This document shows positions 3,416 through 50,907 of a DNA stretch of 64,000 nt, one piece after another. Source of the DNA: Stylophora pistillata (taxonomy: Eukaryota); the NCBI RefSeq assembly GCF_002571385.2, contig NW_019217906.1:134956-198955 (forward strand). Reading direction: 5' to 3'. A program made the position numbers and the translations under genes. Under the pieces are notes generated by a model. The model had not been told where the DNA came from, did not search any database, and saw nothing but the letters and a program-made list of their open reading frames with translations. The first letter of the stretch is position 1. The number at the start of each line of letters is the position of its first letter.

Positions 3416-6400
3416 ATGTCTTTCGCCGTGATTTATGCAGGTAACGTGACATCTAGTCGACTCGTCGAATCGTGCAGAACTTAATTTTTATAACGTCTTA
3501 TAAACATCCAATTCAGAGTGTACAGCCACGCAAATAATAATTCTTGATACTTCTTAGGAAGAATTTTACAGTTGTATTGTTTGAGCTGTCGCTAAGTAAT
3601 ATTTATCGATGTACGCGAATTTAATGTTATTATTAAACCACCTTCATAATGGTAATTTCAGTTTATCGTTAGCGAACCTTGACTACATAAACATAGAAGA
3701 ATCCATATAAAAGTATTTTTGTTTGGCCGTACTGACGAGTTTGACACTAAAAACTGCACCTTATTCTGTCGCTAAGTAATATTTATCGATGTACGCGAAT
3801 TTAATGTTATTAGAAAACCACCTTCATAATGGTAATTTCAGTTCGTTGTTAGCGAACCTTGACTACATAAACAAAGAAGAATACACATAAAAGTATTTTT
3901 GTTTGGCCGTACTGACGAGTTTGACACTAAAAACTGCACCTAAGTCTTATTTTTTATCGGCACCAACATTTTAATCTCAGAACGCATAGAGTGAAGCCGT
4001 AGCTGACTTGCTAAATGTGCTCGTTTTTAAGAAAGAGATCAGTAGTGTAAATTACCGAGAATTTACGTTTAAGACCGAGGTAAACATTCCCACACAACTT
4101 TTTTGATTTAATTTGTCTGCCATTTTCAGGGTCTAAGTTACGTTCGATCCAAACAGTTTTAAGAAGCAATTTAGAGTTCATAGAACAGTTCTCTCTGTGC
4201 TTGGATCGAGAAATGAGATCGATACCAAATTGGAGACACTTGGCAGCAGAACTTGAGGTCGACGTGGATGTAATCAGACGCTTAGAACAGTACCGCGACT
4301 TCAGTCCTACCATCCGATTATTTGAATATCTCGAGCAGAAACGACCAGATTTGACAATTAGACATCTAAAAGACGCTTTTGTGGAGATAAAGAGAAACGA
4401 CCTTGTAAGGTTGCTGGCCGTAGAAGGTATCATTATCGAGACAAATTGTAACTGCCCCTTGGAAATAATAAATAACCGAGGGAAATCAGGGAAATACTAA
4501 TCGGCATGTGTGCTGAGGTTTGTTGCTTTTGATTGGCAAATTTTGGAAGGAAGGTGGCCCCTTCACCATCCTCATAGGTTGAAGAAACCATCAGAATGAA
4601 TTTTGAAAAGCTTTTTTTTCACTCCTTTATGATACAGCTTGTGTGGTTGTTTGTTGTAGCTCTCATGAGATAGTTTTGTCAAATGCTAACCGAAACCAAT
4701 ATCCAAAGTGTACTGGCTTTCTTCAGCTTATGACTGTTGTGAGTCGTGGTGAACGCGCTATAGTTAAATGTTAAATGCTAGACATAAGCTTTCTTTTCAA
4801 GGTTAAAAAGCGTATTTTTATTTTTGATTATATAAATGATACAGTGCAAATTCATTCAAGTTATGAGTTATGGTGCAAGTGCAACATGACTGAAGTTTAA
4901 GAGAAGGCAAGAGAGGATACTTTATCCTGCTTTGGCGAAGCTCTTCGGTTGTGTATACATTCTATGTTTTCTTTGTGAAAATCAGTGTTTCCTCTGTATT
5001 CTAAATTTTTTCAACTTATCTTTTAGCCAGTTCTGGTGACTCTGAAAAAGTCAAAGATGCAATTAGAGCTGATCTTTTGGACGAAATTGCCTTGGCTTTG
5101 GACGATTCTTCACTGGTTCTGTCAAACTGGAAAACCTTGGCAGTGAAATTGGGTGTGTCCCGAGATGCTTGCCGGGAAATGGAGAGACAATCGATGGAAA
5201 GTCCAGCTGGAAAACTGTTCCAGTATTTGGCTACCTCTCTCCCAGAAATGACGCTTTCGAGTTTGAAAAAAGCTCTGGAATCTGTTGAGAGGGGGGATCT
5301 CATTAATTTCCTTCTGGAGCAGAACCTAGGAGGTGATGAGCGTGTATATCGGAAAAAAAAAAAAAAAAAAAACCTAATAAGAAAAAAGGAAATTTTATGT
5401 CACTGAGGCCTGAGTTTTTTTTTTGAATACAAACCTTGTGATCCTGGTCTAGTGAAGGAGGTAATTACAGGAAAACTTGTAGGCTTTTATATTAGCTATT
5501 GCACCAAATTAATAGCAAATTTTGGTAAGGTATGAAAAGCCTGGCATTCTACAGAGAAAGTTGACGAACTATGATCTCATGATACATTTGTTGTTCTTCA
5601 GATGATGTGGTTCTTAAGAATATTATCGTCCCTGGATCGGACCTCCATGAAAGGATGACCCAAGAACTTAATCGTGAAGGACCTGGCATCAAAAACTGGA
5701 GACATGTGGCATCGAAGCTGAAAATCCCAGCTTATGTATATGGAAATTTTGCTGACTTTGAGCAAACCAGGAAAAGTCCTACAAAAAAAATCCTGGAATG
5801 GGTGGTCGCTCGGTTTCCTGGAAAAACATTAAGTGATCTTGCTGAGGCATTAGATAAGATTCAGCGTAATGATGCCATTCAGATAATATCAAAGTACTAT
5901 CCAGACACAGTTGGTGAGTGCATTACTGCCTAAAGAGAACTTTTAAGCCTCGCAGAAAAAATTGTTTCATTTAACTTGTCTGTTGGCATTCTTGCAATTG
6001 CACCATCAGCCCAATGTACACATGTATGCTGTCGCTATTATGATATTTATTCTTACATGTAATTAGGGGTCTTGTGTACGCAGGTTGATATCATATGTTG
6101 AATATGCATGAACTTCTACGCATCCCATGTGCAGAGAATGGTTCAAAGAACCCTGGACAGTTTTTATGGATCGTCTAATTTATCTGTTTCAGATTTAGCC
6201 CTAGAGAAACTAAGTAGTTCATCCCAGGAGAGCGTTACAATGCCAGATTCAACAGATCAGGTAATATGCACTAGCCACAAAAAGACAGAACATGGTTCAT
6301 CCAAAGAGAGCTTTACAATGCCAGATTCAACAGGTCAGGTGCTGTATACTAGCCACAAAAAGGCAGAACATGGTTCTCGTCCCAGTCAAGGTAAAAAGAA

Positions 6401-9400
6401 CATTATTTCACGACAATTCCGTTATGTGTGAATGTGTTTTTTAGGAAATATTTAGCGCTTTGTTAGCATTATAGTGATTGCACCATCAGTCCATATTGTA
6501 GTCAAACGTCCAACACGCTACATGTCGTTTAATCGATTTCACGAAATGTACAATATAAGCGAAAAGCGATGCGAAGCAAGCGGTGGAAACGTTGTATGAC
6601 TAGGACAGCTAGGAACACGAAAACGAAAAGCGGAGAAGACGGTAAGCGAACTGGACAAATGAAACGTGGCGATGGCAAAGCACAAGTGAGCTAAAAAACG
6701 CATGCAAAAAGGCATTAACGAGACGAAATTATGCGAAAACACCCAACAGAATATTGATTAGGTAAAGGCGAAGAAAAAGACAAAGAATGCGATAATGAGA
6801 GGAAAAAATGCGCTTACAAACGAGAAAACAAACAAAAGAGACAAATACAGCCATGCGGCGGTAACAGCCCAATGTGCACATGTATGCAGTCGACATTATG
6901 ATATTTATTTCTTACATGTAATTATGGGTCTTGTGTATGCAGGTTGATATCGCATATTGAATATGCATGGACTTCTACGCATCCATGTGCATTGAATGGT
7001 TAAAAAAACCTGGACAGTTTTTATGGATAGTCTAATTTATCCGTTTTAGATTTAGCCTTAGAGGAACTAAGTTGTTCAATTCAAGAGAGCTTTACAAAGC
7101 CAGATTCAACAGGTCAGGTGCTATATACTCTGGGGCGGATCCAGGATTTAGTCAAGGGGGGTTCGGAGAATTGTCCCCATCCGGAGGAGTCCGAGATTTT
7201 GAAAATTAGGTCTTCGGAAACATGATTTCCAGCGTTCTGAAGGAAAATTTAGGGGGTTCCACCGAACCACCCGAACCACCCCTGGATCCGCCCTAGATAC
7301 TAGCCACAAAAAGAAAGAACATGGTTCTCGTCCCAGTCTAGTTAAAAAGAACATTATTTCACGACAATACCGTAATTTGTGAATGCGTTGTTAGGAAATA
7401 TTTAGCGCTTTTAGGGAGCTTTCAGTCGGTGAGTGCATTGCTACCTCAAGAGAGCACGATGGTTTAAAAGAGTCTATTGGGTCTTGCAGAAAATTGTACG
7501 TTTTTCATTAACTTATCTGTTCGCGTTCTTGCAATTGCACCATCAGCCCAATGTGCACATGTATGCAGAGGACACTATGATATTTATTTCTTACATGTAA
7601 TTATGTCTTGTGTACGCAGGTTGATATCGCATATTGTGTTTGCAAGTTGATATCGTGTATTGAATATGCATGAACTTCTACACATTCATGTGCTTTAAAT
7701 GGTTAAAAAAAAACTGACTAGTCTTGATGGATAGTCTAATTTATCCGTTTCAGATTTAGCCTTAGAGGAACTAAGTTGTTTAACTCAAGAGAGCTTTACA
7801 ATGCCAGATTCAACAGGTCAGGTGCTATCTACTAACCACAAAAAGGCAGAAAATGGTTCTCGTCCCAATCAAGGTAAGAAAATCATCATTTCACGAATAT
7901 CCCGTAACTTGTGAATGTGTTGTAAGGAAAGTGGTTAAGAAGTTCAGAACGATTTCTGTCGGTATGTTTCAATTAGTGCTTTAAGGGAAAAGCTCTTGAA
8001 AAAAATTATAATCCTAGTTAGGAAAAGTATCTTTGAAGGATGCTACGTACTTTGCACCAGAGAAACAATGATAATGGGGTTATAGTTCTATTGCAGTGTA
8101 AGATTTTCTCTTCCCCACTTGATGTCTTAAAAAATCTCAGTCTACATTGCGGCATAAAAGGAATGATATTAGTATGCACTTATTCAAAGTCCATGACAAG
8201 GGCAAAGGAAGGAGAAAAGCTTGCTTCGGTTTCCTAACAGGGAAATGATAACTCTTTGCTGGTTAGCAAAGAAGGAAAGTTACTTAAGTCATTTATTACA
8301 TCCATTTTGAAATCACTGGTGGTCCCTGTAATCTGATTGGCTCTAACTGGTGCGATTTATTCACGAATCGCACCATTTTTTGCTCTAAATCGCATCTTTT
8401 TTCCAATCAATGAGGAAGTTACACTTAAAACAAACAACCACTCAGATTTCAAGGCTTGTTCAAAGTGATCAATCAAATTGCAGGAAAATGAAAGACAAAG
8501 AGTATCATTTGGCAAACTTTGCAACTTTTTTGCTCAGTCAGTACTGCATCAATAAAATATTTGGATTGACTAAGTCCTGTATTTCAAAATGGATGCAATA
8601 AAGTGGTAATTAAACCTTGTGTCGTGCAATTTTGGTCTGAAATCATACTTGTGATTTCAAATCACGCGTATGATTTCAGCCCAAATTGCACTCCATTCAG
8701 TTCAATTATCATTATGTATGTCCCCTTTATTCCCTTTTCAGATGTAAAAGTGGAGGAAGAATCTGGTTACTATGGAGGTTTGTCAGATCGAACAGTTTTA
8801 GTGGGCGGCTGCGATACTTGCGAAGGCTTCAATGTTATATATGCTTTGTCCTTAAAAACGGCAGATGTAATTGTTGAAGAAGAAAATCAGAAGATTGTGG
8901 TGATGGCCTCTACATTTCCGTTCGGATTCACGCAAGAGCAATTTGAAAAAGTCTTTGGTTTACCAGAAGCTGATAATTTTCAAAAGCGTCTGAATTGCTT
9001 TAAGGAAAGTAATCTCCTTCGCTACGACAGAAGAAAGTGTCAGTATTTCCTTAATCGTTCCACTATAGATTTCTTGTCCTTGAAGCCCTATTACAGAAAA
9101 GCCAAATCAATTTTCACTCGTCACTACAGTGACTTGGCTGTATCCCTTTGCAAAACATTCTTGACTAAAGATTGCAAGACAGCAATTGATCAGTACAGAT
9201 CTGAAAAGGACAACATTCGAGAAGCCATGGCTTGGTGTGGAGGTGATCATCTTGAGCTTGAACAAACCGTAAGAGAACGAGCTATTGCCGCGTTCAATGA
9301 AGCAGCTACATTTCTTGCCAAAGTGATGCCCAAACAAGAGTTTCAGTCGCTCTTTTACAAGCTTGCTTGTCGATGTGCCTTTCACATGCAACTTCGTTGT

Positions 9401-11286
9401 GCTTGCTTGACTAACATTGGAATGAAAGTTGTGTTAAGCTGTACATGTACACCTTATATTTGTCCAAGAGCCTTAAATCAAGCAAAGGAAATTTTGACTC
9501 GAGCAAATGAGCTTCAGTCAACAGCTAAAGGTGTTTGCGACGCAACTCGTGCCCAGTGCTTGAGCAAGCTTGGATTCTGTTATGTTCGCGAGGGGCGCGT
9601 TGAAAAGGGTTTTGAATACATCGACGTTGCTTTGAAATTGCGAAAGGAGAAAGCAGAGAAATCCAAGAGGAGCAAAGACGAAGTCATGTTGGCCGCTTGT
9701 ATCAATGATTTGGCAGGTTTGTGACAATTTCCTTTTTATTCTATTTCATTTTTTTCATCATATTAGATATTTACGAATGAACAGTATTGAGAAGGAATTA
9801 TTTGAAACATGTCATCTCCATTTAATCTATGCTGTAAAACCTGTTGATTGTATATATAGGATCCACTGATATTTTGGGAGAGCTTGGCAAAGCATAGCAA
9901 GATCAAAATTGCTTAGGCGTCGTACATCTACAGAGATGGTGGTATAGGTTCGTATGTAGAAAGAACTAAACAGCCCCACCTCACTCTAGTTTCCTAAATG
10001 GCTCTTAATTGTTAAGGTTAGAGCAGGTCTCAGAAGAGAAAAGCGCAATTTTGAATAAAGGAAGTCGGTATGTCATTGAACTCCTTAAATTTATCACTTT
10101 ATTTGTTTTACTTTTAGCTTCTCAAATGGTGCAGCGAAACCATATGCTGGCTATCCATACAAGGCTGCAACATGTACTTCCTGTTTATGAAAAGAACCTC
10201 GGTGACCATCCGTTTACGGCAACGACAATCAACTGGATTGGTAACAGCTACCACGCTTTGGGCGACTACGATAACGCCATTAAATATATCGGTAAATCCG
10301 TAGAGATGCGAGCAAAACTTTTGGGGCCTCATCAGGAAACAGCGAGGTCTCTTTACGATCTAGGTGTAGCCTTCACTGCGAAACAGAACTACGAAACGTG
10401 AGTAAAGATACTCTGCTATTTATTATTCAGCATTTTATAGATCCCACACCCTCTCATCAAAAGTTAACAGCAGAAGGGAGAATAAGGAACCTCGACACGA
10501 CGGCATACAAAAACCTTTATTAATATGAGCATTTGCTCCTTCTTGTAATTAATATAACTCTGTCAAAATTTCAAGCCTAGAGGAGCACAGTCATTTCCAT
10601 AAAAGGCCAATTACGTAGTTGCGTGACGACGACTTGTTAATGTGTAATGTAGCGCAGACAAGTGTGATGCTCGAGCTAGCTGTCGTTTTACTTGTTGACT
10701 CACTTCCTATGTCTTATTATCTGGTTGTGCTGCTGCCACGTGAACCTCCTTGCATTTTGAACCTCCTTGCATCTTGAAAAACTCCTATGATTGATCTAAA
10801 GCTGAACTATCTGTAAGTCAAAATTATACTGCGAATGTGTTTTCTCCCTTTTTTGCACCGTAAGGCTATGATTTGAACAGCAAGACGGACGAACACTGTC
10901 TTTCTTGAATGGTTTCTACTCTTTACAGATCTTAACATTCAATTTAGATTTCATATGTATAGCAATGTATCAGAAAGATGTCAGTCTCTGACACCTAAGG
11001 AGAAAGAACTTCGAGGAAGTGCTTCATTTACCACTGTATCTATTTCAGTGCCCTTAAATATCTTGAAGAGGCAGTTGGTTTACAAGAAGAAGTATTAGAC
11101 ACGTACGACGAGCTGATTTACACTCACCAAGCCATGTCCATTGCCCTTCTTGGTCTTGGAAGAATCGAGGAGGCGGAAGAAGAAATGAAACGCTCGGTTG
11201 AGTGTGCGAAAAAGTTAGATTCTTGGGAAGCTCCTTCAGAAATGATCGGAACCCAAGAACTAGAATTCGACTGGGAGCATTTTTAA
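3416..11286 (+). CDS. 3x Death domain - (NTPase-deleted STAND remnant) - TPR protein, paralogue A, ~916 aa
   Basis: Exons 3416-3440 (tentative start MSFAVIYAG), 4130-4426, 5027-5332, 5602-5913 (three Death domains with NW..LA..L and SP(T/A)..L(F/L)..L...R.D), 6193-6390, 7754-7873 (linkers), 8742-9716, 10118-10397, 11049-11286 (TPRs with LGDHPFTATTINWIG; stop TAA). All introns are GT-AG, the frame is open, and the exon layout matches paralogue B. Confidence 0.85.
3586..3942. repeat. Tandem duplication, 2 x ~180 bp
   Basis: ctgtcgctaagtaatatttatcgatgtacgcg...aaaactgcacct occurs at 3586 and 3766 with few substitutions. Confidence 0.95.
5945..7925 (+). repeat. Triplicated intron + linker-exon unit within paralogue A
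   Basis: Three copies of ...cagcccaatgt(a/g)cacatgtatgc...agATTTAGCC...cgtccca(g/a)tc: exon copies at 6193-6390 (with an internal 78-nt duplication), 7050-7341 (MITE-interrupted, donor lost) and 7754-7873. Confidence 0.9.
7129..7297. mobile_element. MITE inserted into the second linker-exon copy
   Basis: 17-bp TIR tct(g/a)gggcggatccagg. The empty site in the sister copy (gtgctgtatactagccac) implies a TAC duplication; an imperfect 8-bp ctatatac/ctagatac is the alternative reading. Confidence 0.85.
8290..8714. repeat. Non-autonomous element with subterminal IR + terminal hairpin
   Basis: IR tttattacatccattttgaaat (8292-8313) / atttcaaaatggatgcaataaa (8581-8602), followed by the palindrome gtgcaattttggtctgaaatcatac...gtatgatttcagcccaaattgcac. 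Confidence 0.7.
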
Positions 11287-23800: not shown

Positions 23801-24060
23801 TGAAAGAGGCAGTTAAATTGCAAGAGGAAGTGTTAGACACACACGACGAGCTGATTCACACTCATCAAACCATGTCAATTGTTTTGTGTCATCTTGGTAA
23901 AAAAAAGGAAGCCGAAGAAGAAATGAAAAAGGCAGAGGAGTGTGCGAAAAATTTGGATTCTTGGAAAGCCCCTTTAGAAAGACTTGAGAGCCGCGAAGAG
24001 AAAGGGTGGATGGCCGTTTCAAGCATTCCCGAAGCAGAGCCAAGAATTTCAAAATTCTGA
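14870..24060 (+). CDS. 3x Death domain - STAND (NB-ARC-like) NTPase - TPR NLR-like protein, paralogue B, ~1115 aa
   Basis: Exons 14870-14927 (tentative first exon), 16869-17153, 18240-18578, 19446-19763 (Death), 20190-20297, 21354-23039, 23372-23651, 23787-24060. STAND motifs: LVGR, Walker A APPGYGKT, Walker B ILIIENIDD, sensor-1 VLTSRE, LEPL, GGIPL, WHD LHP. TPRs with LGDHPATATTLNWIG. Frame and phases are consistent. Confidence 0.9.
16269..16556. repeat. Tandem duplication, 2 x ~150 bp
   Basis: gtacaccgcacaagccatcgctttgcaaat...cataacttttggatttta at 16269 and 16419. Confidence 0.9.
17242..17277 (-). mobile_element. 36-bp truncated copy of the tRNA-containing retroposon
   Basis: Flanked by a perfect 15-bp TSD acatagttgctttcg (17227-17241, 17278-17292). 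The insert matches the element end at ~58457-58483. Confidence 0.75.
17412..17776 (+). mobile_element. tRNA(Thr-AGT-like)-containing retroposon with a 5' inverted, permuted segment
   Basis: 12-bp TSD attaaatgctat (17400-17411, 17777-17788). tRNA-like core 17633-17704 with A-box and B-box but mismatched anticodon and T stems. 17412-17552 is an inverted copy. Confidence 0.85.
21008..21326 (-). repeat. Dispersed non-autonomous element (second copy 43507-43825, opposite strand)
   Basis: Near-identical reverse-complement match to 43507-43825; subterminal IR plus a long terminal palindrome. Confidence 0.9.
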
Positions 24061-25014: not shown

Positions 25015-28000
25015 TCAAGATATTGTTTCGTCAGTCTGACTCACATCCATATCATTATCGCCTTTCTTACGTCTTCCTCGTTTGGAAGTTCTCTTGGAAA
25101 CTTCCATCTTTTCACTCGTGTCCTCATGTTGTATATTTTCTTTTGATTCCTCCTCAACCTCCATTCCTGCACCAGTTTTAGAAACATGTTTTCTCCTCTG
25201 TTTTTTCTTTGTTTTCTGAACTTCCATTTTCTCTTCAATTACACAGTTCTCACTCGCTAACCTCTTTTCCTCATCGCCATCTCGTAACTCCTTGTTCGAC
25301 TTCAGCAAAGTAAGTTTATTTACCGCAGGAACCCCTACCATGAAAGCATCAGGCACAGGGAGCCCCAATATTTCAGGAAGCATGTACGGTTTTAACCAGC
25401 CGACCAGAGGTGTTCTTCCACAAGTGTAATGCGTCCTCTTGTGAAAGAACAACAAACCATCGACCTAAAATCAATTAAATAGTTTTCAGGAACAAACAGT
25501 ACCAATATAGCATGAGATTGAATAATGAGAGATCACCCTCCTTGTAGGTATCTTAATTAAAACTGTTCAAGTTAGCTTGTTAAGAGGATGTCATTTGAGA
25601 TAAATTTAATAGTACCTAAGCAATAGGCCATTTTACAGTTGTGTACTTAGTTGCCAAGCCTTTGATTTGGAGTGAGGCTGAAGGTGACCTTGTTGTGATA
25701 GAGACCTGTATCTAGTTAGCATAATAACACAGTGACTTACATTTGAAAGGTAGCAATGTTTGTATCATAACAAGGTCACCCCCAGCCTCACTCCCATTAA
25801 AAGGCTTGGCAACTGAGCACACAACTGTAAAATGGACTGTTAACCACTCCACTTGTAACAGATATGTTAGGCCTTCTGAATATTTGTTCTATTACGAATG
25901 CTCTCTCCCTTTCTGTCAGTTATTTTGCAGAATTTGGCACCATATCAAGTAAAGAAACTTTAGGGTGATAAGTCTGGTCCCAAGGACATCTATTGTATTT
26001 TGAAGAGAAGTTATTTGTCCATCATGCACTGTTGTAGGATCAAGTTAAGAACACTAACACTGAGGAGAAAATTGCAAGTAATTTTTTCCAAGTTAAATTC
26101 ATACTGTGAATGATGCCCAAACACTTAATTGACTACCTTGGGGCGACAAAGTTGTTGGTTAAACAATTTTGTGTCTTTTTTTTTGTCAATTTGCAATGAA
26201 AAGAAATCCAGTTAGGAATACACTAAGATACCACTTCTCGTCAGTTGTCTATTTTTCTTACCTCATTGACTGATGTGACACTGATCAAAGCCTCAGAAAT
26301 GGAACTGGCATCACATGGATGATGATGCAAACTGATAAATCTGTACTGATGAATAATGAGCAGAAATGTGTTAAGATAATTTATATCTTCCCTAAAGAGA
26401 GCTTACATGAATCAAACTCAGGATTTCCCCCTTTACATTGTTTCCATCAGTTTTCAAAATATCAGCTTGTTTGTTTGTTTTATGATGCTTTTTTTCAAAT
26501 ATAAAATATTGTTTTTGAACAAATATGAATAAACTAATGAAAAATATAATTATGAGTATAACTTAGCAGTGGCATATGATCTTCCAAAAGGGACTTCATC
26601 CTCTAATTCTGGGTTAAAATGGAATTTGGAAAGTTGTTTTGGTGGAGAGAGAAAATCCAGTGAACATAAAAAAATCCTGGAGCAAGGAAAAAATCCAAAG
26701 CCAAACTCAACCCTCATGTAAAATCAGGTGTGGAATTGAAACTCATCACCATGCTGAGAGGCCATTACCCTTACAAAAGCGCCAATCTTCTTTTCCCAGA
26801 GTGTATGAACCCATAGGCTCTTCATATGACTTGATCATGTCATTAAAAAAAAAAAAAATTTTCAAAACTGTCATGAAATATTTCCTTCAGCATTACAGGG
26901 CTCAAATCTCCTTTTAATTCAAAACAGGCAATTTTGAGTCCTTAAGTGTCTAAGGGAAAGATTTAACAATAGTTTTGAAATTTTAGAATTTACAAGGATT
27001 TGCGTGGAAAACCATGTCAGCATGCATGACTGGGTGGCAAAAGTTATTTTTCTCAATACAAATACTTCTAACTTTCGGTGGCCGTTACAATCACTACTTT
27101 TGAGATGTACGGCTGAAAATTCTCAGGTTTCCCAATTTTAGTATGCTCTTTCAGCTTGCGCAAACAAAATTTTTCAAAAGTGAACTGTTTTTGTGTCTAC
27201 CAAAAGTTGATCATGTGATCAAGTCACGCAAAGAACCCATTAATTACAATCCTCTTACTGGGTTGTCAGCCGACGCTTGTGTCACCAAAGGCTCTTCCTG
27301 AAGCTTTGTCTGCAGCCAGTAAAACCTAAAATCTGTCTGAAAGACAGGAAAATGAAAAAGAAAAGCAATGACATCCGTTTTGTCCACACACATTTCTTGA
27401 TAGGTTATCAACAGCTTCCAAATCAGAGATCACAAAATGAAATACATATGATGGCTGTAAAAAATCACTAGGCAAGCCTCATCAGTAGTAGTGCAGACAG
27501 GCCTTGACACTAACTTTTCAACTTACTAGCCAAGTGGCTGGTGACACTGCAGATGTCAGTTACAACAATTTCAGTTAGTTAACTAGCCAAACTGGTGGGC
27601 TATTGTGGAAATAAAAAAGCATGAGCCAAAACTGACTTTCTACAAGTCTATGGCTAGTTGGCTACCGTTAGTGTAGTGTCAAGCCCTGGCAGAGCTACAT
27701 ATTTCTACTGTTATTAGGGGTTTTGCCGCCTTTTTTTTGTCAGTGGGCCCTGGGACCCACTCAGTCAGCTTGGTTTCCCAGGCCCGTTCAGTTCAGAGCT
27801 CATGTGTTGCATTTTTTAGTTTCAGTAGGTTTCACCTTAATTTATCACCTCAGTTTGTCAGTTTATCATTCATCGCAGCACCATTCATGTAAGTTTTCAA
27901 CGTTCCGTTATTTTATTGTTTTTGCCTTGTCGTATTTCCTGTTTTCTGTTTTCGTTTCATCGTTTTCTGTATTTTATTTACATGTAGTTTCACCATTTGA

Positions 28001-31000
28001 CACTAAAGGAAAATAAACCACTGATTTGTATACTCTTCGTGTTTCGGTTGAACACTACGCTAAGAACGCGACAACTGTACCTCGCTGTCATACACAGGAT
28101 GACCTCTCCAGGTCATGACATCCAACACATGGAAAGTGTTTGTTAGTCCATTGAAGATACAGTCCAAGATGGTGTAATCTAAATTTTCAGGTGTAGAAAT
28201 ATATGTACACGTAGTTTTAGGTATCTTACATTGCGTACTCACTGTACAATTACCACATATACTTATAATGAAGATAACAATAAAAGCTCTAAATTTTTCA
28301 AATTAATTGAGGTTATACTAAGGGGACTCTTAAGCAAGGCAAAAAAAAGGAAAAGAAAATTAAAAGGTGAAAGTTATGGCCAGCCTTTACACCTTCATCT
28401 TATATTGAGAAGTTTAAAGCAAATAATAAGTAAATAAAGAATCTATGACAGCTGTATTACAATTTTGCAAATCATTCACTGGTCATTGTTCAGTAGTCTA
28501 AGTTGATAATCACTTTCATACCTCCAGGTTTGAGAGTTTTTGGACTTCCTCCAGGGAGTAATGAAGAAAACTTGTTCACCCTGTAGCCACTTTTAGTGTA
28601 TGCAGCAGTATATCCCTATATTATTTTACAATAAATTATAAGGACATATTAAACAATTATAGGTCAAAATGAAGTTAGTAATACTTAATTGGAAAAAAGT
28701 CTCCCTGAACTTTACTTTGCATGCATGGTAGGCACTTTCTATGAACAGGTGTCAAATCCACACAATCAGTTGTGAACAACAAATTGGAAGCTACATGTAC
28801 CTTGAGCCTCAAATAAACTTACACTTGCACATAGATTAGCAAGTGTTTGGGAGCATGTGGTGTACAGAACTAGGCTGTATATATTAACTTACATTTGCGG
28901 CAATGACAAGGTTCCTTTTGCCCACTGGACAAATAACCATCAACCACTCCCCCTTTAAATCATCAGGAATATCAACAAGCCACTCGGATAACATCAGCTA
29001 AAACAAAAAGAAGGAAAGAAGGGAGAAAAGAAAAAATCAATTTTCTGATCAAAGATTTTGATCCCAATCTATACCATGTAGTGAATAATAATTAGGCTGG
29101 CAGAGAAAAGAGATAATAAATGACTCTGTTAAGCTTTCACTTTACTATGAGCAAGGTAGAAAAAAAGTGTATTTAGATTGGTCTAGAAAACTGAATCACT
29201 TTTGTTTTCTGAACAAAATTAGATCTCCTCAAAGAGCAACAAAACAAACTTTATTCTTATTCTGATTACAGACATACATAATTAAAATTCTTATTACAAA
29301 AATACATGAATAAAATGGTTTGCCCCGCAAATAACTAAGAAGCTAGTCAGGAGCTACAAATTTTCAATCATAATATGAATACATTACTGAGTAAAACTGT
29401 AATGATAATTTTAAAGTGATCCAAACTTGAGACATGAATAAAATTATGAAATAGCCACACCTGATATGCATAAGGATTAAATTTCTTTTTACGACTTCTC
29501 CTGCTTTTCTTGTCACTCTCCTCAATAAACTCCATCTCCTACAGTATACGTCAACCATTAATTTCCAGAACTTGTAGTAAATGGCAGATATAACAATAAT
29601 CAATCATAGCAAAGAAATGATGGGATGAAATGGATAAGTTCAAAATAAATAACGATTTTTTAAAAAGCATGTTTACCTCTGTCTCGACATCTTCAACTTC
29701 TAAACATCCTTCCACCAGTTTTCTTGCATAGTTGACATAGTCTCGCCTGTGTCTGAGGATACAAAATAGAACATTACATACAATATCAAGTACAACACAA
29801 TGTGCTGAGTTACCACTAACAATTTCCAACAGCAATGACGTCAGTAAACTTAGAAATAAAGTGAAGATGCATGAAAAGAATAACTTATATAAGAAAAACA
29901 TAATTATTTTATCACAGCATGTATAGGGCCTGATGTCATTAATTTTCCACATGGACAGAACATACTTTTTCTGCTCCTCCAACATTCTTTTCCTTCGTAA
30001 AAACTGATCTGGTGTGTTACTGGGCTTCATTTTATACTGTGTCATCCTGATGGCATGTAAACATAAGTCAGTGCTTAGTATTACAACATCCCCATTGTGG
30101 CAAAAAATACAGGGGCTTTTTCTTTAGCCGTAGCAGTAATAATATATATCATTCTATAGCTGCACAGTACCACAGTGTAAACATTGTAGTGGCTCAAAAG
30201 AATAATGATAAGTATACAATACTTTTAAAGTTGTCTTGCTCCAAATAGTTGCTATGGTCATTCTTTACTCATGAGTATTCTAGATAATCACAAATCTCAT
30301 TGTTTAACCCCCTAACTCCCAGAAGTGATTTATAATTGAAACTTCACCCTATAATATCCATACACCATCCACCAAACAAATAAAGAAAATACTCAGACTT
30401 ATCAGGTAGAGGTTGTTCTCTTGATCTAACACCAAATTCTTGTAAATAATTTACAACGAAATGTGTAGAAGTTAGAGGGGAGAGTCGACAATCAGATTTT
30501 GGGATTTAAAAGGTTAATGGAGCCACTAAGTCATTGCTTGCTTTCAATTAATTGGGGAAATCAAGGTCTACTCTTACATTTTGGGGGGATCTTTTTGGGT
30601 GTAGGGGGAGGGGGACTGGGGGGAACTCTGTACACATAAGTACCCTCGATTTCCAGAGCACATTTCTGTGCTGACAGATACATCTACTTAATACTCTTTC
30701 AACGCTATCACACATTAAAAGAGATATAAAGTGCACTTGTCTGAGAGAAGACCTGCGAGTGACGTCTTTGCAAGAGGGGCAAGATCTACACATACATGTG
30801 CACATCCGCGAGTTTTTCGACTCTCACTAAACCCCTTGGACGAACCTTAAAGTATTTCTGACGATGCACTACAACTGTGAGGGAACAGGAGACCCAGGTT
30901 GTACTGAAGTCTGGTTTACACTGACGATCTTACCTTGGATGGGGCGCTGAAGTGTCGTTTGGGTCAGAGGAAACTGTAAAACTGGCTGCGAATGATTCAG

Positions 31001-41808: not shown

Positions 41809-43506
41809 ACAGCAGCTGCTGATTTTAGTCGATTATTGAATGATGCAGGACATTAGTTAATCCTGTGTGTGACATTGATGCCACCGCTTTGCAGAGGACG
41901 TAAAAATAAGTGCAAGGTCTGTTTGTGCAGGAGATGAAAGTGAGAGACAAGTTTTCTGAAATAAGCTCAATTTGTTGATGTACTTTTGACGTGTCGAAGT
42001 TCAAACTGGCAATCGTAGCTAAAATGAAACTTTTCCGTTTTGAATTTGTGATTTTTTTCAAAAGATGCTCTGAATAGAGCTATTTTAAATGCCATCATCA
42101 TCATCGCCATTTTATCTTTTTTTTTTTTTAAATATTAGTTTAGTCATCCGTTCTGAATTTCTAAAGATTATGGAGAAATCTCAAGTTCCGGCTCGGACAG
42201 CTGATCTCAAAAATGGCAGCAGTGAGAACTCATTATTACTCATTAGTAATGGAAATTACAAAAAAAATTATTTCAATTGCCAAGCAAATCAAAATTAATA
42301 TATGATTTCAAATTACAAAATTTTTATTTTACGGTCACGTAAAGAGACCAATGAAAATAGAGAATGTGCGTTGGGTAAATTTGTTTGTTTCAAAAGCCAT
42401 GTGGGATCGTATTTCAGGTGGCATGTAGCAGATTGCTCGTCCAAACACAGGTTTCCTTCCGGTGAGAGGAGAAAAATGTCCATAGTACGTGTATCGTTTT
42501 TAATGCGTCCCAATATTGCGATCATTACGTCAGGCTCTGTGCAGTTGCTACAGTGTCAGCGATCCTACAAGTTTTTAAACCGGTAAAAGACTCAACAAAG
42601 CCAGAGTTTGTTCACTTGTTCCATTTTATGATTGTGTGCTGAAGTGCTTTTTCTCCTTCAGCGCCTGAAAGGTCTGTCTCTTCAGAAAATGAAATCTCCA
42701 AGTAGAGTTAGATCTTTTTTAGCACGTCACGCAAGGAGTGTCCGCGTGACAAGGCTCAACAACAGCTACATGAAGACTAGCCGGATAGTGTTTACTCACT
42801 AAATTTACTTCTTTTGTATTCTATTGCAATCAATCCTTGTTTTTAACTTTGCGAGGAAACTTAGGCAATAACAATGAAATAAGTTCTTTTTTAGATAGAG
42901 AAAGAGAGTAGATTGTCAGTGTTTTTGTTAGTTAATGTGATGTTATAGAAGATATTTATTTGCTCAGTTTGAAAGCTTCTAATCGCTTTTTAATTGACTA
43001 AAGGCTAAAGATAAATTATAAGTACTTTATGCAATATATCGTCATTAATACATGACGTAATCATTTACAAGGAAAAGGGCATTCAATGCATTGCTACTGC
43101 TCGCATTGTTTTTCAAGTCATTCGCTCTCCTTGTAAAGAAGGATCTTTTGCACTTATTTTTTGTAATTATTTTTCGAAAGGAAAAATGAAAGAAATTTTG
43201 GATTTTTAAACATATAGTGTTCATTTATTTTTATAAGCTTTCTTCAAAACATCAGTTTTCACAATTTCTTCGATATGCAACAGGATGACTTTGAAGCAGA
43301 AATAAAACTCATCATTGAATGTCTTCTGTACTGTAATAAAATTGCAAAAAAATTAATAAATGAAATGTTTGTCTGTTGCTTGATATCCTACGTCACGAAA
43401 GTACCAGAAAATTTTAACCATTTAACCCCAAGAAGTGATAAACATGTAACTTCTCCCTATAACATCCAAATATTATTTAGCAAATAGGCAATGAGAATAT
43501 TCAAAC

Positions 43507-43825
43507 TTATTACATGACTCGGGCAGTCAGAGAGCCAATAACTAAAATCAACCAATCAATATGCTCAATTGCCGGTCAATATTCTCTCAGTATTGGACTA
43601 GCCACTGTTCCGAATGGTCCTGAACGATACCGCACTTGTGTCCCTTTGAAATTCAGTCGTATAATAAATCGCTTATTAACCAAGCTTGCTCGGGACCGTA
43701 CTGGAAGAATATCGGCCTTCGGTCTTTTTTGTACGGACCTCGCTGCGCTCGGTCCGTGCTGTCAAGACCTCGGGCCGATATTCTCCCAGTACGGCCCTCG
43801 CGCTTGGTTAGTAAGATATATTTAT
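43507..43825 (+). repeat. Second copy of the 21008-21326 element, nested in a piggyBac-like MITE
   Basis: It interrupts the 43414-43932 MITE at a ...ctta|tca... site (compare the uninterrupted copy at 30304-30517) and is flanked by TTA. Confidence 0.85.
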
Positions 43826-48527: not shown

Positions 48528-50907
48528 CTATGGCTTTTTGCCCTTTCCCTCTAAGGAGTCAGGCTTTGGCACAACGGGAGCTGCATCAGCTGATCCAACC
48601 CCTGATAGGATTGGATCATGCTCCAGATCACTGGCCATTTCCCAGTCGTTCTTAGGATCATCCAGATACTCCTCTGGTTCCTCGATTTTCTTCACTCGGT
48701 TGTTTATCTTCTCTCTGAAGTATTTTACGTATGAAATTTCATTTTTCATCATGTTTTCGCAAAGTTTTCTCTTCCTCTTAGGAACGTTTTTCTTGAGAGA
48801 ATAGCCCTTCACGTAAACTCCAGTGTACGCCTCGTCCAAGAAGTTTCCCTTTTGCAAACAAGCTCTTGTCAAAGCTTCGTTTCTATGTCTAAAAATCTTG
48901 AGTTCTTTTTGAAAACTTGGTCCCTGAGCCTTGACGTTTTTCCAGAACGTTCTATTAAAATGCTTATACAGCATAAAATCTGCCTTGTTCCAGCTTTTTA
49001 TATCCTCGCTAACTTCCTTGTTTATAACCTTCTGCTTCTGCTTATCTTGCCGCTCGTTCAACTTGAAGTACAAAATATCCTTCAACTCCCAGCATAAGAG
49101 ACGTTTTAGAAGCAACAGGGACTCATCGAAATGCTCTAGAATCATAACCAGATCAAATTCTTTGTCCAAGAAATTTATGTATCGTTCAACCGCCGTCACA
49201 TTTTGGAAGTATCGAAAGTCCAAACCAAGATCGAAAAGCATCGGGTTGCGTACTAAATTGAGGGCCAAGGTTGTTTTCATCAAAGGTTTTATCTCTTGAA
49301 ACGGTGGTGGAAACTTTAAAAACGTACCCAGAGGATCTTCTTCGTCTTTAAAACCCAACGGCTTCGCAAAATGCATGAAGTTGAACACAGATTCGTATTG
49401 GGTGACCGGGTCCCTGAGTATTGTTATGTAGCGACTGCTCTCCTTTGGAAATAAATAATTCATTGGCCTTTTGTTGAACCTCGCGTGATTGCAGAGAATA
49501 TTTGCCCCAAAATTGTACAGAGGTGCACTGTATGAGACGCGAAATCTTGCTGGCCACAAGAAGGTGAAAAGCTGCTTCTGCCTTGGTAGCACAAAAGTCA
49601 AGTTATTCTTGTCTCCATATCGATTAAGAATATTTGTGATGGTGCTACTACCAGTTTTGTGAGTTTTAAGAAAGAGAACGTGATTTATCGGGGAGCAGGT
49701 TTGCTTTTTGTGATGTTTTGGAAGCTTTTGATTCTTAGAGCTCGGATGGTTCTCTGGTTGTGATGATATGTTTACAAACTGATATTCTGTTTGGTCTGCT
49801 TTCGGTTCTTCAGCCAATCGAATGTCAGCTCTTTTGAGCTGCAAATTCCTTGTGTATATTACCCTGTTTCAAGAAATCAAATTATATGCGTCATTTATCG
49901 GTTGTGTAGTTCGTGTAGTTCACCCCTAGCTAGTAAATCCTAATTAGAGTGCTTTATTGCCTATTCAGCCTTTCTTTATGCAGACACAACCTGTTCTATC
50001 CATGGCAATAATTTCATTTTCTAAGCTAAGAATAACATCGAGTTTTTACAGGAGAGAATAACTCTAAGCAAATACAACCCTGTGTAAACCCTGTTCAAAC
50101 GACCCGAGAAAAATATCTGCTATTTTTAAATCACCTGCAGCTCGATAGGATGTCTATTCATTCAAAACGTAAACATCGAAAGCCATGTTCGTGCCTTTAT
50201 CCAAGAAATATAAATTCCTCATTCTACACAATAAAATTTAGAATAATATAATTGTGAAATGTGTTAACCATTCTTTCCGAAAACCGAGGAAATTTGAAAT
50301 TTAAGTTTAATCTAAACTGTCCTCGTGTGTAAACATTGACTTCATTTTAGGCAATAGTCTAGGAGGTTTGAGAAGTTTAAACACTGATTTATTTTCATCA
50401 AATGAGATTGAAATAGCTGTGGTTCTGCGGTATCTTTATAAATTCGGAGACAATTGATTAAACGAATTGGTCCTCTAACACGTTGTTTTCTGAATTTCTA
50501 TTTAATGTAACAGCGTTTAAAATGGCTTTGGAGGCCGGGTCGAAATTGCTGGAAGGCTACTATCCGACATTGAAAAAAAAAACGCTCAAATGAGGACAAG
50601 AGAACAACTAATAAAGCTTTGAAAGTGCAGCTGTACTATAAATCTGGAGCAAAGATTAACACCTGCAAGGATTTGAAAATATTATTGACTTTCCTGTCGT
50701 TTGAATAAAGGAGGGCAGAATTTTTTTTATCTGGAGAAATGCCTTTATTTTTATCAAGATATGTACGAGATCTTTTATTACTTACTTGTGTTCTACGGTA
50801 GGACAACGAGCTGTTGACGGCAGATTGTTCACTCCATAAAAAACGATGCATATCAATGAAATTACGGAAACACAACCGAAGAGGGTCTTTATATGAAACG
50901 CCATCAT
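48528..50907 (-). CDS. Galactose-3-O-sulfotransferase (GAL3ST / galactosylceramide sulfotransferase-like), 485 aa
   Basis: Exon 1 50786-50907 encodes a type II anchor MMAFHIKTLFGCVSVISLICIVFYGV (phase 2); exon 2 is 48528-49863. 5'-PSB FLKTHKTGSST, CNHARF, 3'-PB TILRDP.TQYES, RNPMLFDLG, FDLVMILEHFDESLLLLK..LCW, WNKADFMLY.HFN. Confidence 0.95.

What the first reader, a model, noticed from the sequence alone, without database searches (positions are those of the whole stretch)
3416..24060. Tandem NLR-like pair: an intact 3xDeath-STAND-TPR receptor beside a preserved paralogue lacking the NTPase switch
Seen: both genes share the layout Death-Death-Death-linker-big exon-TPR-TPR. The big exon is 1686 nt in B but 975 nt in A (net 237 codons shorter, in frame). 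A aligns to B up to the strand just before Walker A (LVGG..C...ADVIV vs LVGR..C...SVEIV). It then jumps straight to the winged-helix region (EENQKIVVMASTFPF vs QENQRILVMFSTFPY), losing Walker A/B, sensor 1 and GxP. The paralogues are substantially diverged, yet A has no stops or frameshifts and keeps all splice sites, which argues against a dead pseudogene. Established: Death/NB-ARC/TPR combinations occur in coral NLR-like repertoires, STAND proteins need the NBD to oligomerise, and linked sensor/helper pairs are known in plants. Inference: A is a switch-less partner (decoy, dominant-negative, co-sensor or constitutive adaptor) that couples to B through the tandem Death domains. This would be a paired-receptor module I do not know to be described in cnidarians.
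Basis: partly seen in the sequence, partly recalled or inferred. Interest (0 to 1): 0.88.

Follow-up and report, generated by a model that had tools for sequence, protein, structure and literature searches.

The report
Switch-less member of coral Death-STAND-TPR array
One gene in a row of at least eight related immune-receptor-like genes of the coral Stylophora pistillata has cleanly lost its nucleotide-binding "switch" but is still transcribed and partly under selection; it is a variant inside a fast-evolving gene array, not a dedicated partner of the neighbouring gene.

Summary
Gene A (RefSeq LOC111328789) and gene B (LOC111328786) share the layout Death x3, linker, big exon, TPR, TPR. A's big exon is 975 nt and B's is 1686 nt. 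One in-frame deletion removed everything from just after strand beta1 to the start of the winged helix: P-loop, Walker B, sensor 1 and the GxP helical domain.

The deletion is real. An independent DNA run and poly(A) RNA contigs cover the junction, and the junction occurs once in the genome. A is transcribed and spliced.

The "pair" reading fails. A and B are the last two of eight head-to-tail paralogues on this scaffold, with more copies elsewhere. B is the most divergent member. A's Death exons are sister to those of G6, an intact member about 30 kb upstream. A's 3' half groups with intact genes from probable Pocillopora. Nothing else found carries the deletion, so it arose on A's own lineage.

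On that lineage HD2 and TPR stay constrained (omega 0.29) and the winged helix drifts (omega 0.84). A uniform-decay model is only weakly rejected (p=0.04). RNA depth suggests most transcripts lack the Death exons.

Best reading: a retained, switch-less derivative in a birth-and-death array. A young expressed pseudogene is the main rival.

The parts
3416..3442 (+). Gene A, first coding exon of RefSeq isoform X2 and of PFX26578.1 (ATG at 3416). Isoforms X1, X3 and X4 use another first exon that I could not place.
   Evidence: Exact mapping of P0115 and P0218 to the window.
4132..4425 (+). Gene A, Death domain 1 exon.
   Evidence: Pfam Death at 25.5 bits. Exon limits from P0115 mapping, within 2 nt.
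5026..5331 (+). Gene A, Death domain 2 exon.
   Evidence: Pfam Death at 33.1 bits. Mapping.
5601..5913 (+). Gene A, Death domain 3 exon.
   Evidence: Pfam Death at 36.8 bits. The RNA joint 5913|6193 is GT..AG in two poly(A) runs.
6193..6389 (+). Gene A, linker exon copy 1. It is phase 1-1 and contains an internal 78-nt duplication.
   Evidence: RNA joint, frames, repeats, P0115/P0218 mapping.
7049..7111 (+). Gene A, linker exon copy 2, cut short by the repeat inserted at 7131-7297. It is used only in the RefSeq X2-type models.
7131..7297 (.). High-copy interspersed repeat inside linker unit 2.
   Evidence: DNA word depth is about 78,000 against about 150 in the flanks, and loose ends lead to other copies.
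7753..7873 (+). Gene A, linker exon copy 3. Its donor at 7873 is spliced to the big exon. In RNA contigs this exon is continuous with upstream sequence back to at least 7264.
   Evidence: Joint 7873|8742 in poly(A) contigs and 6 raw reads. RNA contig covers 7264-7871 plus 8740-9211. Frame continuity.
8292..8664 (.). High-copy repeat in the intron, ending about 80 nt before the big-exon acceptor.
   Evidence: DNA word depth is about 100,000-200,000, with many loose ends at 8291-8293 and 8664.
8742..9716 (+). Gene A, big exon (975 nt). It holds the N-terminal remnant up to strand beta1, then the winged helix, HD2 and the first TPR-like helices. The NBD and HD1 are missing.
8873..8878 (+). Deletion junction (..ATT GTT | GAA GAA..). 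About 726 nt are missing relative to G6, and the net difference from B is 711 nt.
   Evidence: Nucleotide alignments to G6, G5, PocX and C444a. The junction is unique in the genome. It is covered by independent DNA and by RNA.
10118..10397 (+). Gene A, TPR exon 1.
   Evidence: TPR_12 at 50.3 bits. RNA joints on both sides. Limits.
11049..11286 (+). Gene A, TPR exon 2, with the stop codon at 11284-11286.
14870..14929 (+). Gene B (LOC111328786), first coding exon of isoform X1.
   Evidence: Exact mapping of P0223.
16871..17152 (+). Gene B, Death domain 1 exon.
   Evidence: Pfam Death at 35.3 bits. Mapping.
18239..18577 (+). Gene B, Death domain 2 exon.
   Evidence: Pfam Death at 19.5 bits, below the cut-off. 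It is homologous to D2 of the other array members. Mapping.
19445..19762 (+). Gene B, Death domain 3 exon.
   Evidence: Pfam Death at 35.5 bits. Mapping.
20189..20296 (+). Gene B, single linker exon.
   Evidence: Mapping of P0222 and P0223.
21354..23039 (+). Gene B, big exon (1686 nt): an intact NBD-HD1-WHD-HD2 module of APAF-1-like STAND type.
   Evidence: P-loop GYGKTS. AlphaFold2 model with pLDDT 83.5. Foldseek hits 6mfv at 4e-10 and APAF-1 1z6t at 8e-9. Exon limits.
23372..23651 (+). Gene B, TPR exon 1.
   Evidence: TPR_12 at 72.2 bits..
23788..24060 (+). Gene B, TPR exon 2 with the stop codon.

Best explanation
Gene A (RefSeq LOC111328789, Stylophora pistillata) is one member of a head-to-tail array of at least eight genes. 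These genes encode three Death domains, a linker, an APAF-1-like STAND NTPase module (NBD-HD1-WHD-HD2) and a TPR sensor.

Shown:
- A single in-frame deletion of about 720 bp inside the big exon removed the NBD after strand beta1, together with HD1.
- The deletion arose on A's own lineage. For every segment, A's closest relatives keep the NTPase.
- A is still transcribed and correctly spliced.
- On A's branch, HD2 and TPR remain under purifying selection at the family's normal strength.
- The winged helix, which in STAND proteins packs against the lost NBD and HD1, evolves almost neutrally.

Inferred:
- A persists as a switch-less derivative. Without a P-loop it cannot bind nucleotide or form a STAND oligomer on its own.
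- Its conserved HD2-TPR surface could still bind whatever the intact paralogues sense. In the minority isoforms, its Death trio could also do so.
- A would therefore act as a competitor or modulator of the array as a whole, not as a dedicated partner of B.
- RNA depth suggests the main transcript starts downstream of the Death exons, so the major product may be a Death-less WHD-HD2-TPR protein.
For: - Array and layout.
- Deletion anatomy.
- Deletion is real: an independent DNA contig and RNA contigs cover the junction, and the junction is unique in the genome.
- Transcription and four GT..AG joints.
- RefSeq isoforms X1-X4 have open frames.
- STAND fold of the intact module.
- No other protein has the A-type junction among 5.8 and 1.8 billion sequences. 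The shorter hits keep GGIPL.
- Closest relatives are intact: G6 for the Death exons (100% bootstrap) and the PocX genes for bigC and TPR (97%, or 74% with C444a added).
- Codon models on the A branch: all segments 0.38-0.41 (p about 1e-5 to 1e-8 against 1); TPR 0.17; HD2 0.42; HD2+TPR 0.29 (p=4e-6); WHD 0.84 (p=0.017 against background, not different from 1).
- Uniform relaxation is rejected at p=0.041.
- RNA depth in the stranded run is 2-3 on Death exon 3, 6-7 over 7273-7873, and 10-22 on the big and TPR exons. Junction reads are 6 against 22 and 16.
Against: - The age of the deletion along A's branch is unknown. Low omega may largely reflect time before the deletion.
- The uniform-decay model with about 10% of the branch neutral is only marginally rejected (p=0.04).
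- The family is reticulate, with discordant segment trees. Sister assignments, and so branch estimates, are approximate.
- Truncated and dead copies are common in this family: G1, G4, the remnant at C123:2183-3672, L014 and L017. The prior for decay is therefore high.
- A carries other structural damage: a triplicated linker exon, repeat insertions, and an RNA form that keeps 7264-7752, which has stops in frame.
- Omega on the Death exons (0.48) is not significantly below 1 (p=0.07).
- There is no protein-level or interaction evidence.
Confidence: 0.5

Rival explanations
1. A is a young, still-transcribed pseudogene. The deletion disabled the receptor recently, and the open frame and low omega are inherited from the time before the deletion. 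The gene is on its way out, as expected in a birth-and-death array.
For: - The array holds several dead or truncated copies: G1, G4 with a TAA, the degenerate remnant at C123:2183-3672, L014 and L017.
- An in-frame deletion has a 1 in 3 chance of arising.
- The uniform-relaxation model with f about 0.1 fits almost as well.
- The deletion is absent from the nearest relatives.
- The dominant RNA form keeps intronic sequence with stops, and the Death exons are weakly covered.
- Corals are described as evolving such families by birth and death (PMC10236652).
Against: - The winged helix has accumulated a large excess of non-synonymous change on the A branch (omega 0.84, branch 0.71 against 0.38). 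TPR has not (omega 0.17). This heterogeneity is unexpected if all parts lost constraint together (p=0.04).
- About 880 codons and all splice sites are intact.
- Expression is robust in several independent studies.
Confidence: 0.35
2. One reading: A and B are a dedicated two-gene module, in which a switch-less co-sensor, decoy or adaptor works with its intact helper and couples to it through their tandem Death domains, as in linked plant NLR pairs.
For: - A and B are adjacent on the same strand and both are transcribed. B-type full-length transcripts P0112 and P0225 exist.
- Both carry three Death domains.
Against: - They are 2 of at least 8 tandem members.
- B is the most divergent member, and A-B Death identity is 47-51% against 78-83% for A-G6.
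- They lie head-to-tail, not head-to-head.
- No integrated domain was found.
- Most A RNA appears to lack the Death exons.
- No conserved A-like/B-like pairing was seen in the Pocillopora scaffolds. There the A-related gene is intact and sits beside a G3/G5-like gene.
Confidence: 0.07
3. The deletion is an assembly artefact or a private allele of the sequenced colony.
For: The scaffold has many gaps. The reference data set is among the best holders.
Against: - A DNA run from a different 2024 study gives a contig with zero differences across the junction.
- Poly(A) RNA contigs from two further studies cross it.
- Raw stranded RNA reads cover it.
- 20 runs from 10 studies hold the stretch.
Confidence: 0.02

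Closest known systems
Coral NB-ARC/AP-ATPase-type NLR-like genes with Death effector domains and TPR repeats, expanded by tandem duplication (Hamada et al. 2013 as summarised in PMC4083563; PMC10236652)
   Same: B and the six other intact members have this make-up: N-terminal Death domains, an APAF-1-like NTPase module and C-terminal TPR. They lie in tandem, and copies are born and die.
   Different: A lacks the defining NTPase, so surveys that start from NACHT/NB-ARC domains would not list it. Even the intact members miss Pfam NB-ARC and reach only sub-threshold AAA_22 and nSTAND3 matches.
Arabidopsis NRG1C, a truncated helper NLR that antagonises its full-length tandem neighbours NRG1A and NRG1B (bioRxiv 10.1101/2021.01.27.428547; PMC12177489)
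   Same: Both are truncated members of a tandem NLR cluster, are expressed, and could interfere with full-length neighbours.
   Different: Going by that paper's title, NRG1C is N-terminally truncated. A has an internal deletion of the NBD and HD1 and keeps both ends. Antagonism is shown for NRG1C and is only inferred here.
Vertebrate CARD-only and PYD-only proteins (COPs, POPs); from my own knowledge, not checked in a paper here
   Same: They are death-fold-containing derivatives of neighbouring signalling genes. They lack the enzymatic or oligomerising part and act as competitors.
   Different: They consist of one death-fold domain only. A keeps a large HD2-TPR sensor part, and its main RNA may even lack the Death exons.
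Plant paired NLRs (RGA4/RGA5, RRS1/RPS4); from my own knowledge
   Same: Linked receptor genes with a division of labour.
   Different: Plant pairs are head-to-head, both partners keep the NB-ARC, and the sensor carries an integrated decoy. None of this holds for A and B.
APAF-1 (PDB 1z6t) and the archaeal STAND-TPR protein 6mfv
   Same: The predicted fold of B's big exon matches their NBD-HD1-WHD-HD2 order.
   Different: Sequence identity is 13-14%. The N-terminal effector is three Death domains rather than a CARD. The sensor is TPR rather than WD40 (APAF-1).

Membership tests
STAND NTPase, APAF-1/AP-ATPase-like (gene B and the intact array members) | Walker A P-loop GxxxxGK[ST] | tested here: met
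   GYGKTS at B big-exon aa 72-77. G72, G74 and K75 are invariant in 63 homologues.
STAND NTPase, APAF-1/AP-ATPase-like (gene B and the intact array members) | Domain order NBD-HD1(GxP)-WHD-HD2, followed by a repeat sensor | tested here: met
   AlphaFold2 model with pLDDT 83.5. Foldseek hits 6mfv at 4e-10, APAF-1 at 8e-9, then NRC2, MalT and CED-4. GGIPL motif with P251 invariant. TPR_12 downstream.
STAND NTPase, APAF-1/AP-ATPase-like (gene B and the intact array members) | Match to Pfam NB-ARC (PF00931) or NACHT (PF05729) above the gathering score | tested here: not met
   Only AAA (23.2 bits against a 21.2 cut-off), AAA_22, nSTAND1 and nSTAND3, the last three below their cut-offs. phmmer against the PDB found no STAND hit. 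Membership rests on motifs and predicted fold.
STAND NTPase (gene A) | Presence of the P-loop NTPase domain | tested here: not met
   B aa 69-307, approximately, are absent from A. No AAA-type Pfam hit occurs in A's exon or in P0116. A is a derivative of the family, not a STAND NTPase.
Death domain superfamily (PF00531) | Pfam Death match above the gathering score (22.6 bits) | tested here: met
   A: 25.5, 33.1 and 36.8 bits for the three exons. B: 35.3, 19.5 (below the cut-off) and 35.5 bits. Whole proteins score 81.9 bits for A and 76.8 bits for B.
Paired (sensor/helper) NLR module of the plant type | Two genes forming a specific unit: head-to-head with a shared promoter, conserved as a pair, both with an NBD, and the sensor carrying an integrated domain | tested here: not met
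   A and B lie on the same strand within an array of eight. A has no NBD. There is no extra domain. A's nearest relatives are G6 and PocX, not B.
Paired (sensor/helper) NLR module of the plant type | Physical interaction of the two partners | tested here: inconclusive
   Complex prediction of the two Death trios gave no verdict. This needs an experiment.
Pseudogene | Stops or frameshifts, lost splice sites, no transcription, omega near 1 | tested here: not met
   The frame is open over 876-941 aa. Four introns are spliced in RNA. Omega is 0.38-0.41 overall. Only the WHD segment is near 1. A very recent loss of function cannot be excluded.
Truncated-NLR antagonist (NRG1C-like) or death-fold decoy (COP/POP-like) | Derived from full-length tandem neighbours and expressed | tested here: met
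Truncated-NLR antagonist (NRG1C-like) or death-fold decoy (COP/POP-like) | Demonstrated inhibition of the full-length relatives | not testable with these tools
   Needs co-expression or knock-down experiments.

The most novel reading that the evidence does not exclude
A is a selectively maintained, nucleotide-switch-less regulator of a coral Death-STAND-TPR receptor array. Its conserved HD2-TPR surface would sequester the ligand or cap assemblies of the intact paralogues, and in minor isoforms its Death trio could do the same. It may be expressed mainly from an internal, repeat-associated start. That would make it a cnidarian counterpart of plant NRG1C or of vertebrate CARD-only and PYD-only decoys, reached by an internal NBD deletion rather than by terminal truncation.
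Probability: 0.3. Interest if true: 0.7.

Novelty: new variant of a known kind. Interest (0 to 1): 0.45.

Why it matters
Coral NLR-like repertoires are catalogued by their NACHT or NB-ARC domains, so derivatives that have lost that domain are invisible to those surveys. This locus shows that such a derivative can remain expressed, keep an open frame, and stay under constraint on its sensor half.

If A modulates its intact relatives, negative regulation by truncated paralogues would extend to cnidarians. It is currently known from plant NLR clusters and vertebrate inflammasome decoys. It would also give a concrete, testable entry point into how corals tune a large cell-death and immune receptor family.

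If A is only a dying copy, it is an ordinary snapshot of birth-and-death evolution. The data also document strong domain-level mosaicism within the array: Death exons and sensor halves have different histories. This is relevant to how coral receptor diversity is generated.

Tried and rejected
- Complex prediction of B's Death trio (P0222 aa 1-300) with A's Death trio (P0116 aa 14-316) gave no verdict. It is not evidence either way.
- phmmer of B's big exon against PDB sequences gave only spurious ubiquitin and designed-TPR hits. The fold search was needed to classify the module.
- Searches for an A-type deletion elsewhere found none. I searched the 1.84-billion representative library with A's exon, the 5.8-billion collection with full-length A, and the same collection with A's exon ORF. 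The short hits P0170, P0171, P0173 and P0176 looked promising, but they keep HD1 (GGIPL) and are simply broken or partial ORFs.
- Cluster look-ups found no allelic A variants from other populations, so no test could be made on changes that arose after the deletion.
- IQ-TREE on 112 sequences timed out. FastTree was used instead.
C444a was therefore analysed only from L007.
- Earlier-findings look-ups by place, and by the five words together, returned nothing.
- I considered that the NBD might be encoded elsewhere in A's long intron (6.4-8.7 kb). tblastn found no trace. That intron holds a triplicated linker unit and repeats instead.
- I considered a chimera formed by unequal crossing-over at the junction, because A's 5' and 3' halves have different nearest relatives. 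A is similarly close to G6 on both sides of the junction (71% and 79% nt), and the family is mosaic in general. A simple internal deletion is therefore the more economical reading.
Database proteins returned by the tools (P0115, P0116, P0222) were used instead, and exons were searched by reference.
- N stretches were left untouched.
Full report
**Identity of the locus.** The window is Stylophora pistillata scaffold C123:134956-198955. The scaffold length of 673,121 bp and the RefSeq accessions come.
- Gene A is LOC111328789. It has isoforms X1-X4 of 941, 937, 920 and 880 aa, and the genome paper's model PFX26578.1, named "Nephrocystin-3", of 876 aa.
- Gene B is LOC111328786, with isoforms of 1115 and 1082 aa; PFX26579.1 is named "Kinesin light chain".
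- Neither has a described function.

**Check of the observation.**
- Pfam finds a Death domain in each of A's three exons and in B's D1 and D3. B's D2 is below the cut-off at 19.5 bits. TPR_12 is found in the TPR exons. Weak P-loop matches (AAA, AAA_22, nSTAND3) occur only in B's big exon.
- BLASTP aligns A's big-exon aa 91-372 to B aa 307-588 at 60% identity without a gap, and the stretch before it only weakly.
- In a six-paralogue alignment, A follows the family up to LVG..C.E and the beta1 strand (..ADVIV against ..AVEIV). It then continues directly at EENQKIVVM. This skips Walker A (GYGKTS), Walker B (LIIENID), the LVLTSR sensor strand and the GGIPL helical domain.
- The exon limits are 8742-9716 (975 nt) and 21354-23039 (1686 nt), both with canonical AG/GT.
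- At nucleotide level, homology to the closest intact copy stops at ..ATT GTT and resumes at GAA GAA AAT. About 726 nt are missing and there is no real microhomology.

**The deletion is real and A is expressed.**
- Twenty public runs from ten studies hold the stretch.
- I laid four runs on window 5500-11400. A DNA run from a 2024 study, different from the probable source study, gives a contig over 8679-9192 with no differences.
- Two poly(A) RNA runs give a contig that joins 7871|8740 and runs through the junction to 9211.
- Stranded raw reads cover all exons in sense orientation.
- GT..AG joints are seen at 5913|6193, 7873|8742, 9716|10118 and 10397|11049. All keep the reading frame.
- The junction sequence occurs once in the genome. 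Other copies match only from just after it.

**What the intact module is.**
- An AlphaFold2 model of B's big exon (63-sequence alignment, pLDDT 83.5) shows beta1 at 64-68, the P-loop at 69-75, the Walker B strand at 139-143, the sensor strand at 193-199, helical domain 1 to about 306, a winged helix at 309-366, a helical domain 2, and TPR-like helices.
- Foldseek's best matches are a STAND-TPR protein (6mfv, 4e-10), ADP-bound APAF-1 (1z6t, 8e-9), plant NRC2, MalT and CED-4.
- The intact genes therefore encode APAF-1-like STAND NTPases, although they miss the Pfam NB-ARC and NACHT thresholds.
- The deletion in A removes the NBD after beta1 plus all of HD1. It leaves WHD, HD2 and TPR.

**It is an array, not a pair.** Searching the whole genome and reading the 135 kb upstream shows eight same-strand copies with the same exon layout on this scaffold:

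| Copy | Position on C123 | State |
|---|---|---|
| G1 | 3' fragment at about 26 kb | One stop, no Death exons |
| G2 | about 38-44 kb | Intact |
| G3 | about 48-54 kb | Intact |
| G4 | about 61-70 kb | In-frame TAA in the NBD |
| G5 | about 91-99 kb | Intact |
| G6 | about 108-114 kb | Intact |
| A | about 139-146 kb | NBD and HD1 deleted |
| B | about 152-159 kb | Intact |

- A degenerate remnant lies at 2-4 kb. Further copies lie on scaffold C444, and distant families occur elsewhere.
- B is the last member. Snurportin-1 and a sulfotransferase gene follow it.

**Relationships.**
- Pairwise identities and nucleotide trees give ((G2,G4),B,((G3,G5),(G6,A))), with B the most divergent member.
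- A's Death exons are 78-83% identical to G6 and 47-51% to B.
- Database searches with A's exon and with full-length A found no other protein with the A-type junction. The shorter hits retain GGIPL and are broken ORFs.
- In a tree of the C-terminal 282 residues, A groups with P0127, P0128 and P0130. These are 596-606 aa big-exon proteins with intact NBDs, representing more than 300 member sequences from Tara Pacific coral metagenome scaffolds. I infer these are Pocillopora.
- With the DNA of two such scaffolds, A is sister to these "PocX" genes in bigC (97%) and in TPR (97%). In the Death exons A is sister to G6 (100%), and PocX groups with G3/G5 (99%).
- Adding the intact S. pistillata copy C444a lowers the supports to 74% for (A,PocX) in bigC and 71% for (A,C444a) in TPR exon 1.
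- The family is therefore mosaic through gene conversion or recombination, and strict orthology cannot be claimed.
- For every segment, however, A's nearest relatives keep the NTPase. The deletion therefore arose on A's own lineage, within or after the Stylophora-Pocillopora divergence.

**Selection.** I fitted GY94-type branch models with my own script.

| Segment | Sister used | Omega on A branch | Test results |
|---|---|---|---|
| All, 715 codons | G6 | 0.376 | vs 1: p=9e-9; vs background 0.30: p=0.19 |
| Death | G6 | 0.48 | vs 1: p=0.07 (G6 branch 0.53) |
| WHD, B aa 307-400 | PocX | 0.84 | vs background 0.33: p=0.017; vs 1: p=0.66; branch length 0.71 against 0.38 in the sister |
| HD2 | PocX | 0.42 | vs 1: p=0.013 |
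| TPR | PocX | 0.17 | vs 1: p=2.6e-5 |
| HD2+TPR | PocX | 0.29 | vs 1: p=4e-6 |

- The G6-sister rows are and the PocX-sister rows.
- I also tested a model in which all three segments relax to neutrality together for a fraction f of the branch. It fits best at f=0.1 and is rejected against free segment values only at p=0.041.
- My reading: the domain that lost its packing partners has drifted, and the sensor half has not. This favours continued function after the deletion but does not prove it.
- The single exonic variant seen between individuals, 9022 C>T, is synonymous.

**Transcript structure.**
- A's linker exon, with its flanking intron, is triplicated. The units lie at about 5971-6440, 6865-7390 and 7508-7921. 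Copy 2 is broken by a high-copy repeat at 7131-7297.
- All copies are phase 1-1. This explains the RefSeq isoforms that use one to three of them.
- In the RNA data, however, the form that carries the 7873|8742 joint is continuous back to at least 7264. That stretch has in-frame stops.
- Depth in the stranded run is 2-3 over Death exon 3, 6-7 over 7273-7873, and 10-22 over the big and TPR exons.
- Junction reads number 6 (7873|8742) against 22 and 16 downstream. The 5913|6193 joint has no raw reads.
- Either there is strong 3' bias, or most A transcripts start downstream of the Death exons. In the latter case the main product would be a Death-less WHD-HD2-TPR protein. This is inference.

**Interpretation.**
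- Shown: the anatomy, the reality of the deletion, its expression, the array context, the lineage-specific origin, and heterogeneous constraint.
- Established knowledge: STAND proteins need the NBD for nucleotide-dependent oligomerisation, so A cannot act as a switch.
- Inferred: A survives as a switch-less competitor or modulator acting through its conserved HD2-TPR part and, in minor isoforms, its Death trio. It would act on the array in general.
- The main rival is a young, expressed pseudogene in a birth-and-death array. This is the model proposed for coral tandem families (PMC10236652; tandem NACHT/NB-ARC pairs and triplets in Acropora, PMC4083563).
- The nearest functional analogy is the truncated NRG1C, which antagonises its full-length tandem neighbours in Arabidopsis (10.1101/2021.01.27.428547).

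- Read laying was given 5901 letters.
- N runs were not filled.
Exons were searched by reference, and tool-returned database proteins were used for full-length queries.
- Exon codon alignments were concatenated only inside scripts, for the evolutionary analysis.

Noticed in passing
window 5971-7921: The linker exon of gene A and its flanking intron are present as three tandem units of about 700-860 bp. Copy 1 has an extra internal 78-nt duplication. B, G5 and G6 have a single linker exon. This explains the RefSeq isoforms X1-X4.
   Followed up: yes
window 7131-7297 and 8292-8664: Two very high-copy interspersed repeats lie in A's long intron. DNA word depth is 500-1400 times that of the flanks. 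The second has a variable hairpin-like centre at about 8655-8664 and ends about 80 nt before the big-exon acceptor. Either could supply an internal transcription start.
   Followed up: partly
C123:26142-29023 (L008, L033): G1 is a 3' fragment that starts at B aa 285, has one TAA and has no Death exons. RefSeq annotates it as XP_022789039.1 'Nephrocystin-3'. A 674-aa transcript-derived protein (P0103) is nearly identical but carries the NBD and lacks the stop. An intact allele or copy therefore exists outside this assembly position.
   Followed up: partly
C123:66677-68383 (L004) and C123:43095-43845 / 68500-69953: G4 has an in-frame TAA in its NBD (..KDIG*CPT..). Its TPR exons are nevertheless 97-98% identical to those of G2, while the big exons are only 76% identical. 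This is a sign of recent gene conversion or partial duplication.
   Followed up: partly
L045, L046 (Tara Pacific coral metagenome scaffolds) against the window: Segment trees disagree. A's Death exons go with G6, and A's bigC and TPR go with the PocX genes. PocX Death exons go with G3/G5, and G6's TPR goes with G5. There is domain-level mosaicism across the array and across genera. L046 also shows that the array (a G3/G5-like gene followed by PocX) is conserved in that coral.
   Followed up: yes
C444:50194-54909 (L007) and C444:114782-118165 (L014): A second cluster lies on another scaffold. L007 is an intact big exon, 74-75% identical to PocX, and its reported 'stop' lies upstream of the exon. 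L014 is a fragment 96% identical to G4. This could be a second array or partly a haplotig.
   Followed up: partly
C123:2183-3672: A degenerate remnant of a big exon, with 2 TAA, 5 TGA and 1 TAG, lies at the 5' end of the scaffold. It is a long-dead array member.
   Followed up: no
window 25015-30045 (- strand) and 48528-49844 (- strand): Downstream of B the array ends. Exon-sized ORFs match snurportin-1 (the m3G-cap-binding domain and the N-terminal motif). A single 438-aa ORF is a galactose-3-O-sulfotransferase (Pfam E=1.5e-73).
   Followed up: partly
window 16665-16808 (-) against 16706-16843 (+), and 43499-43555 (-): Sequence just upstream of B's Death-1 exon matches itself in inverted orientation. 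The first 19 codons of the ORF running into B's big exon recur at 43.5 kb on the other strand. These are probably small repeats in B's introns.
   Followed up: no
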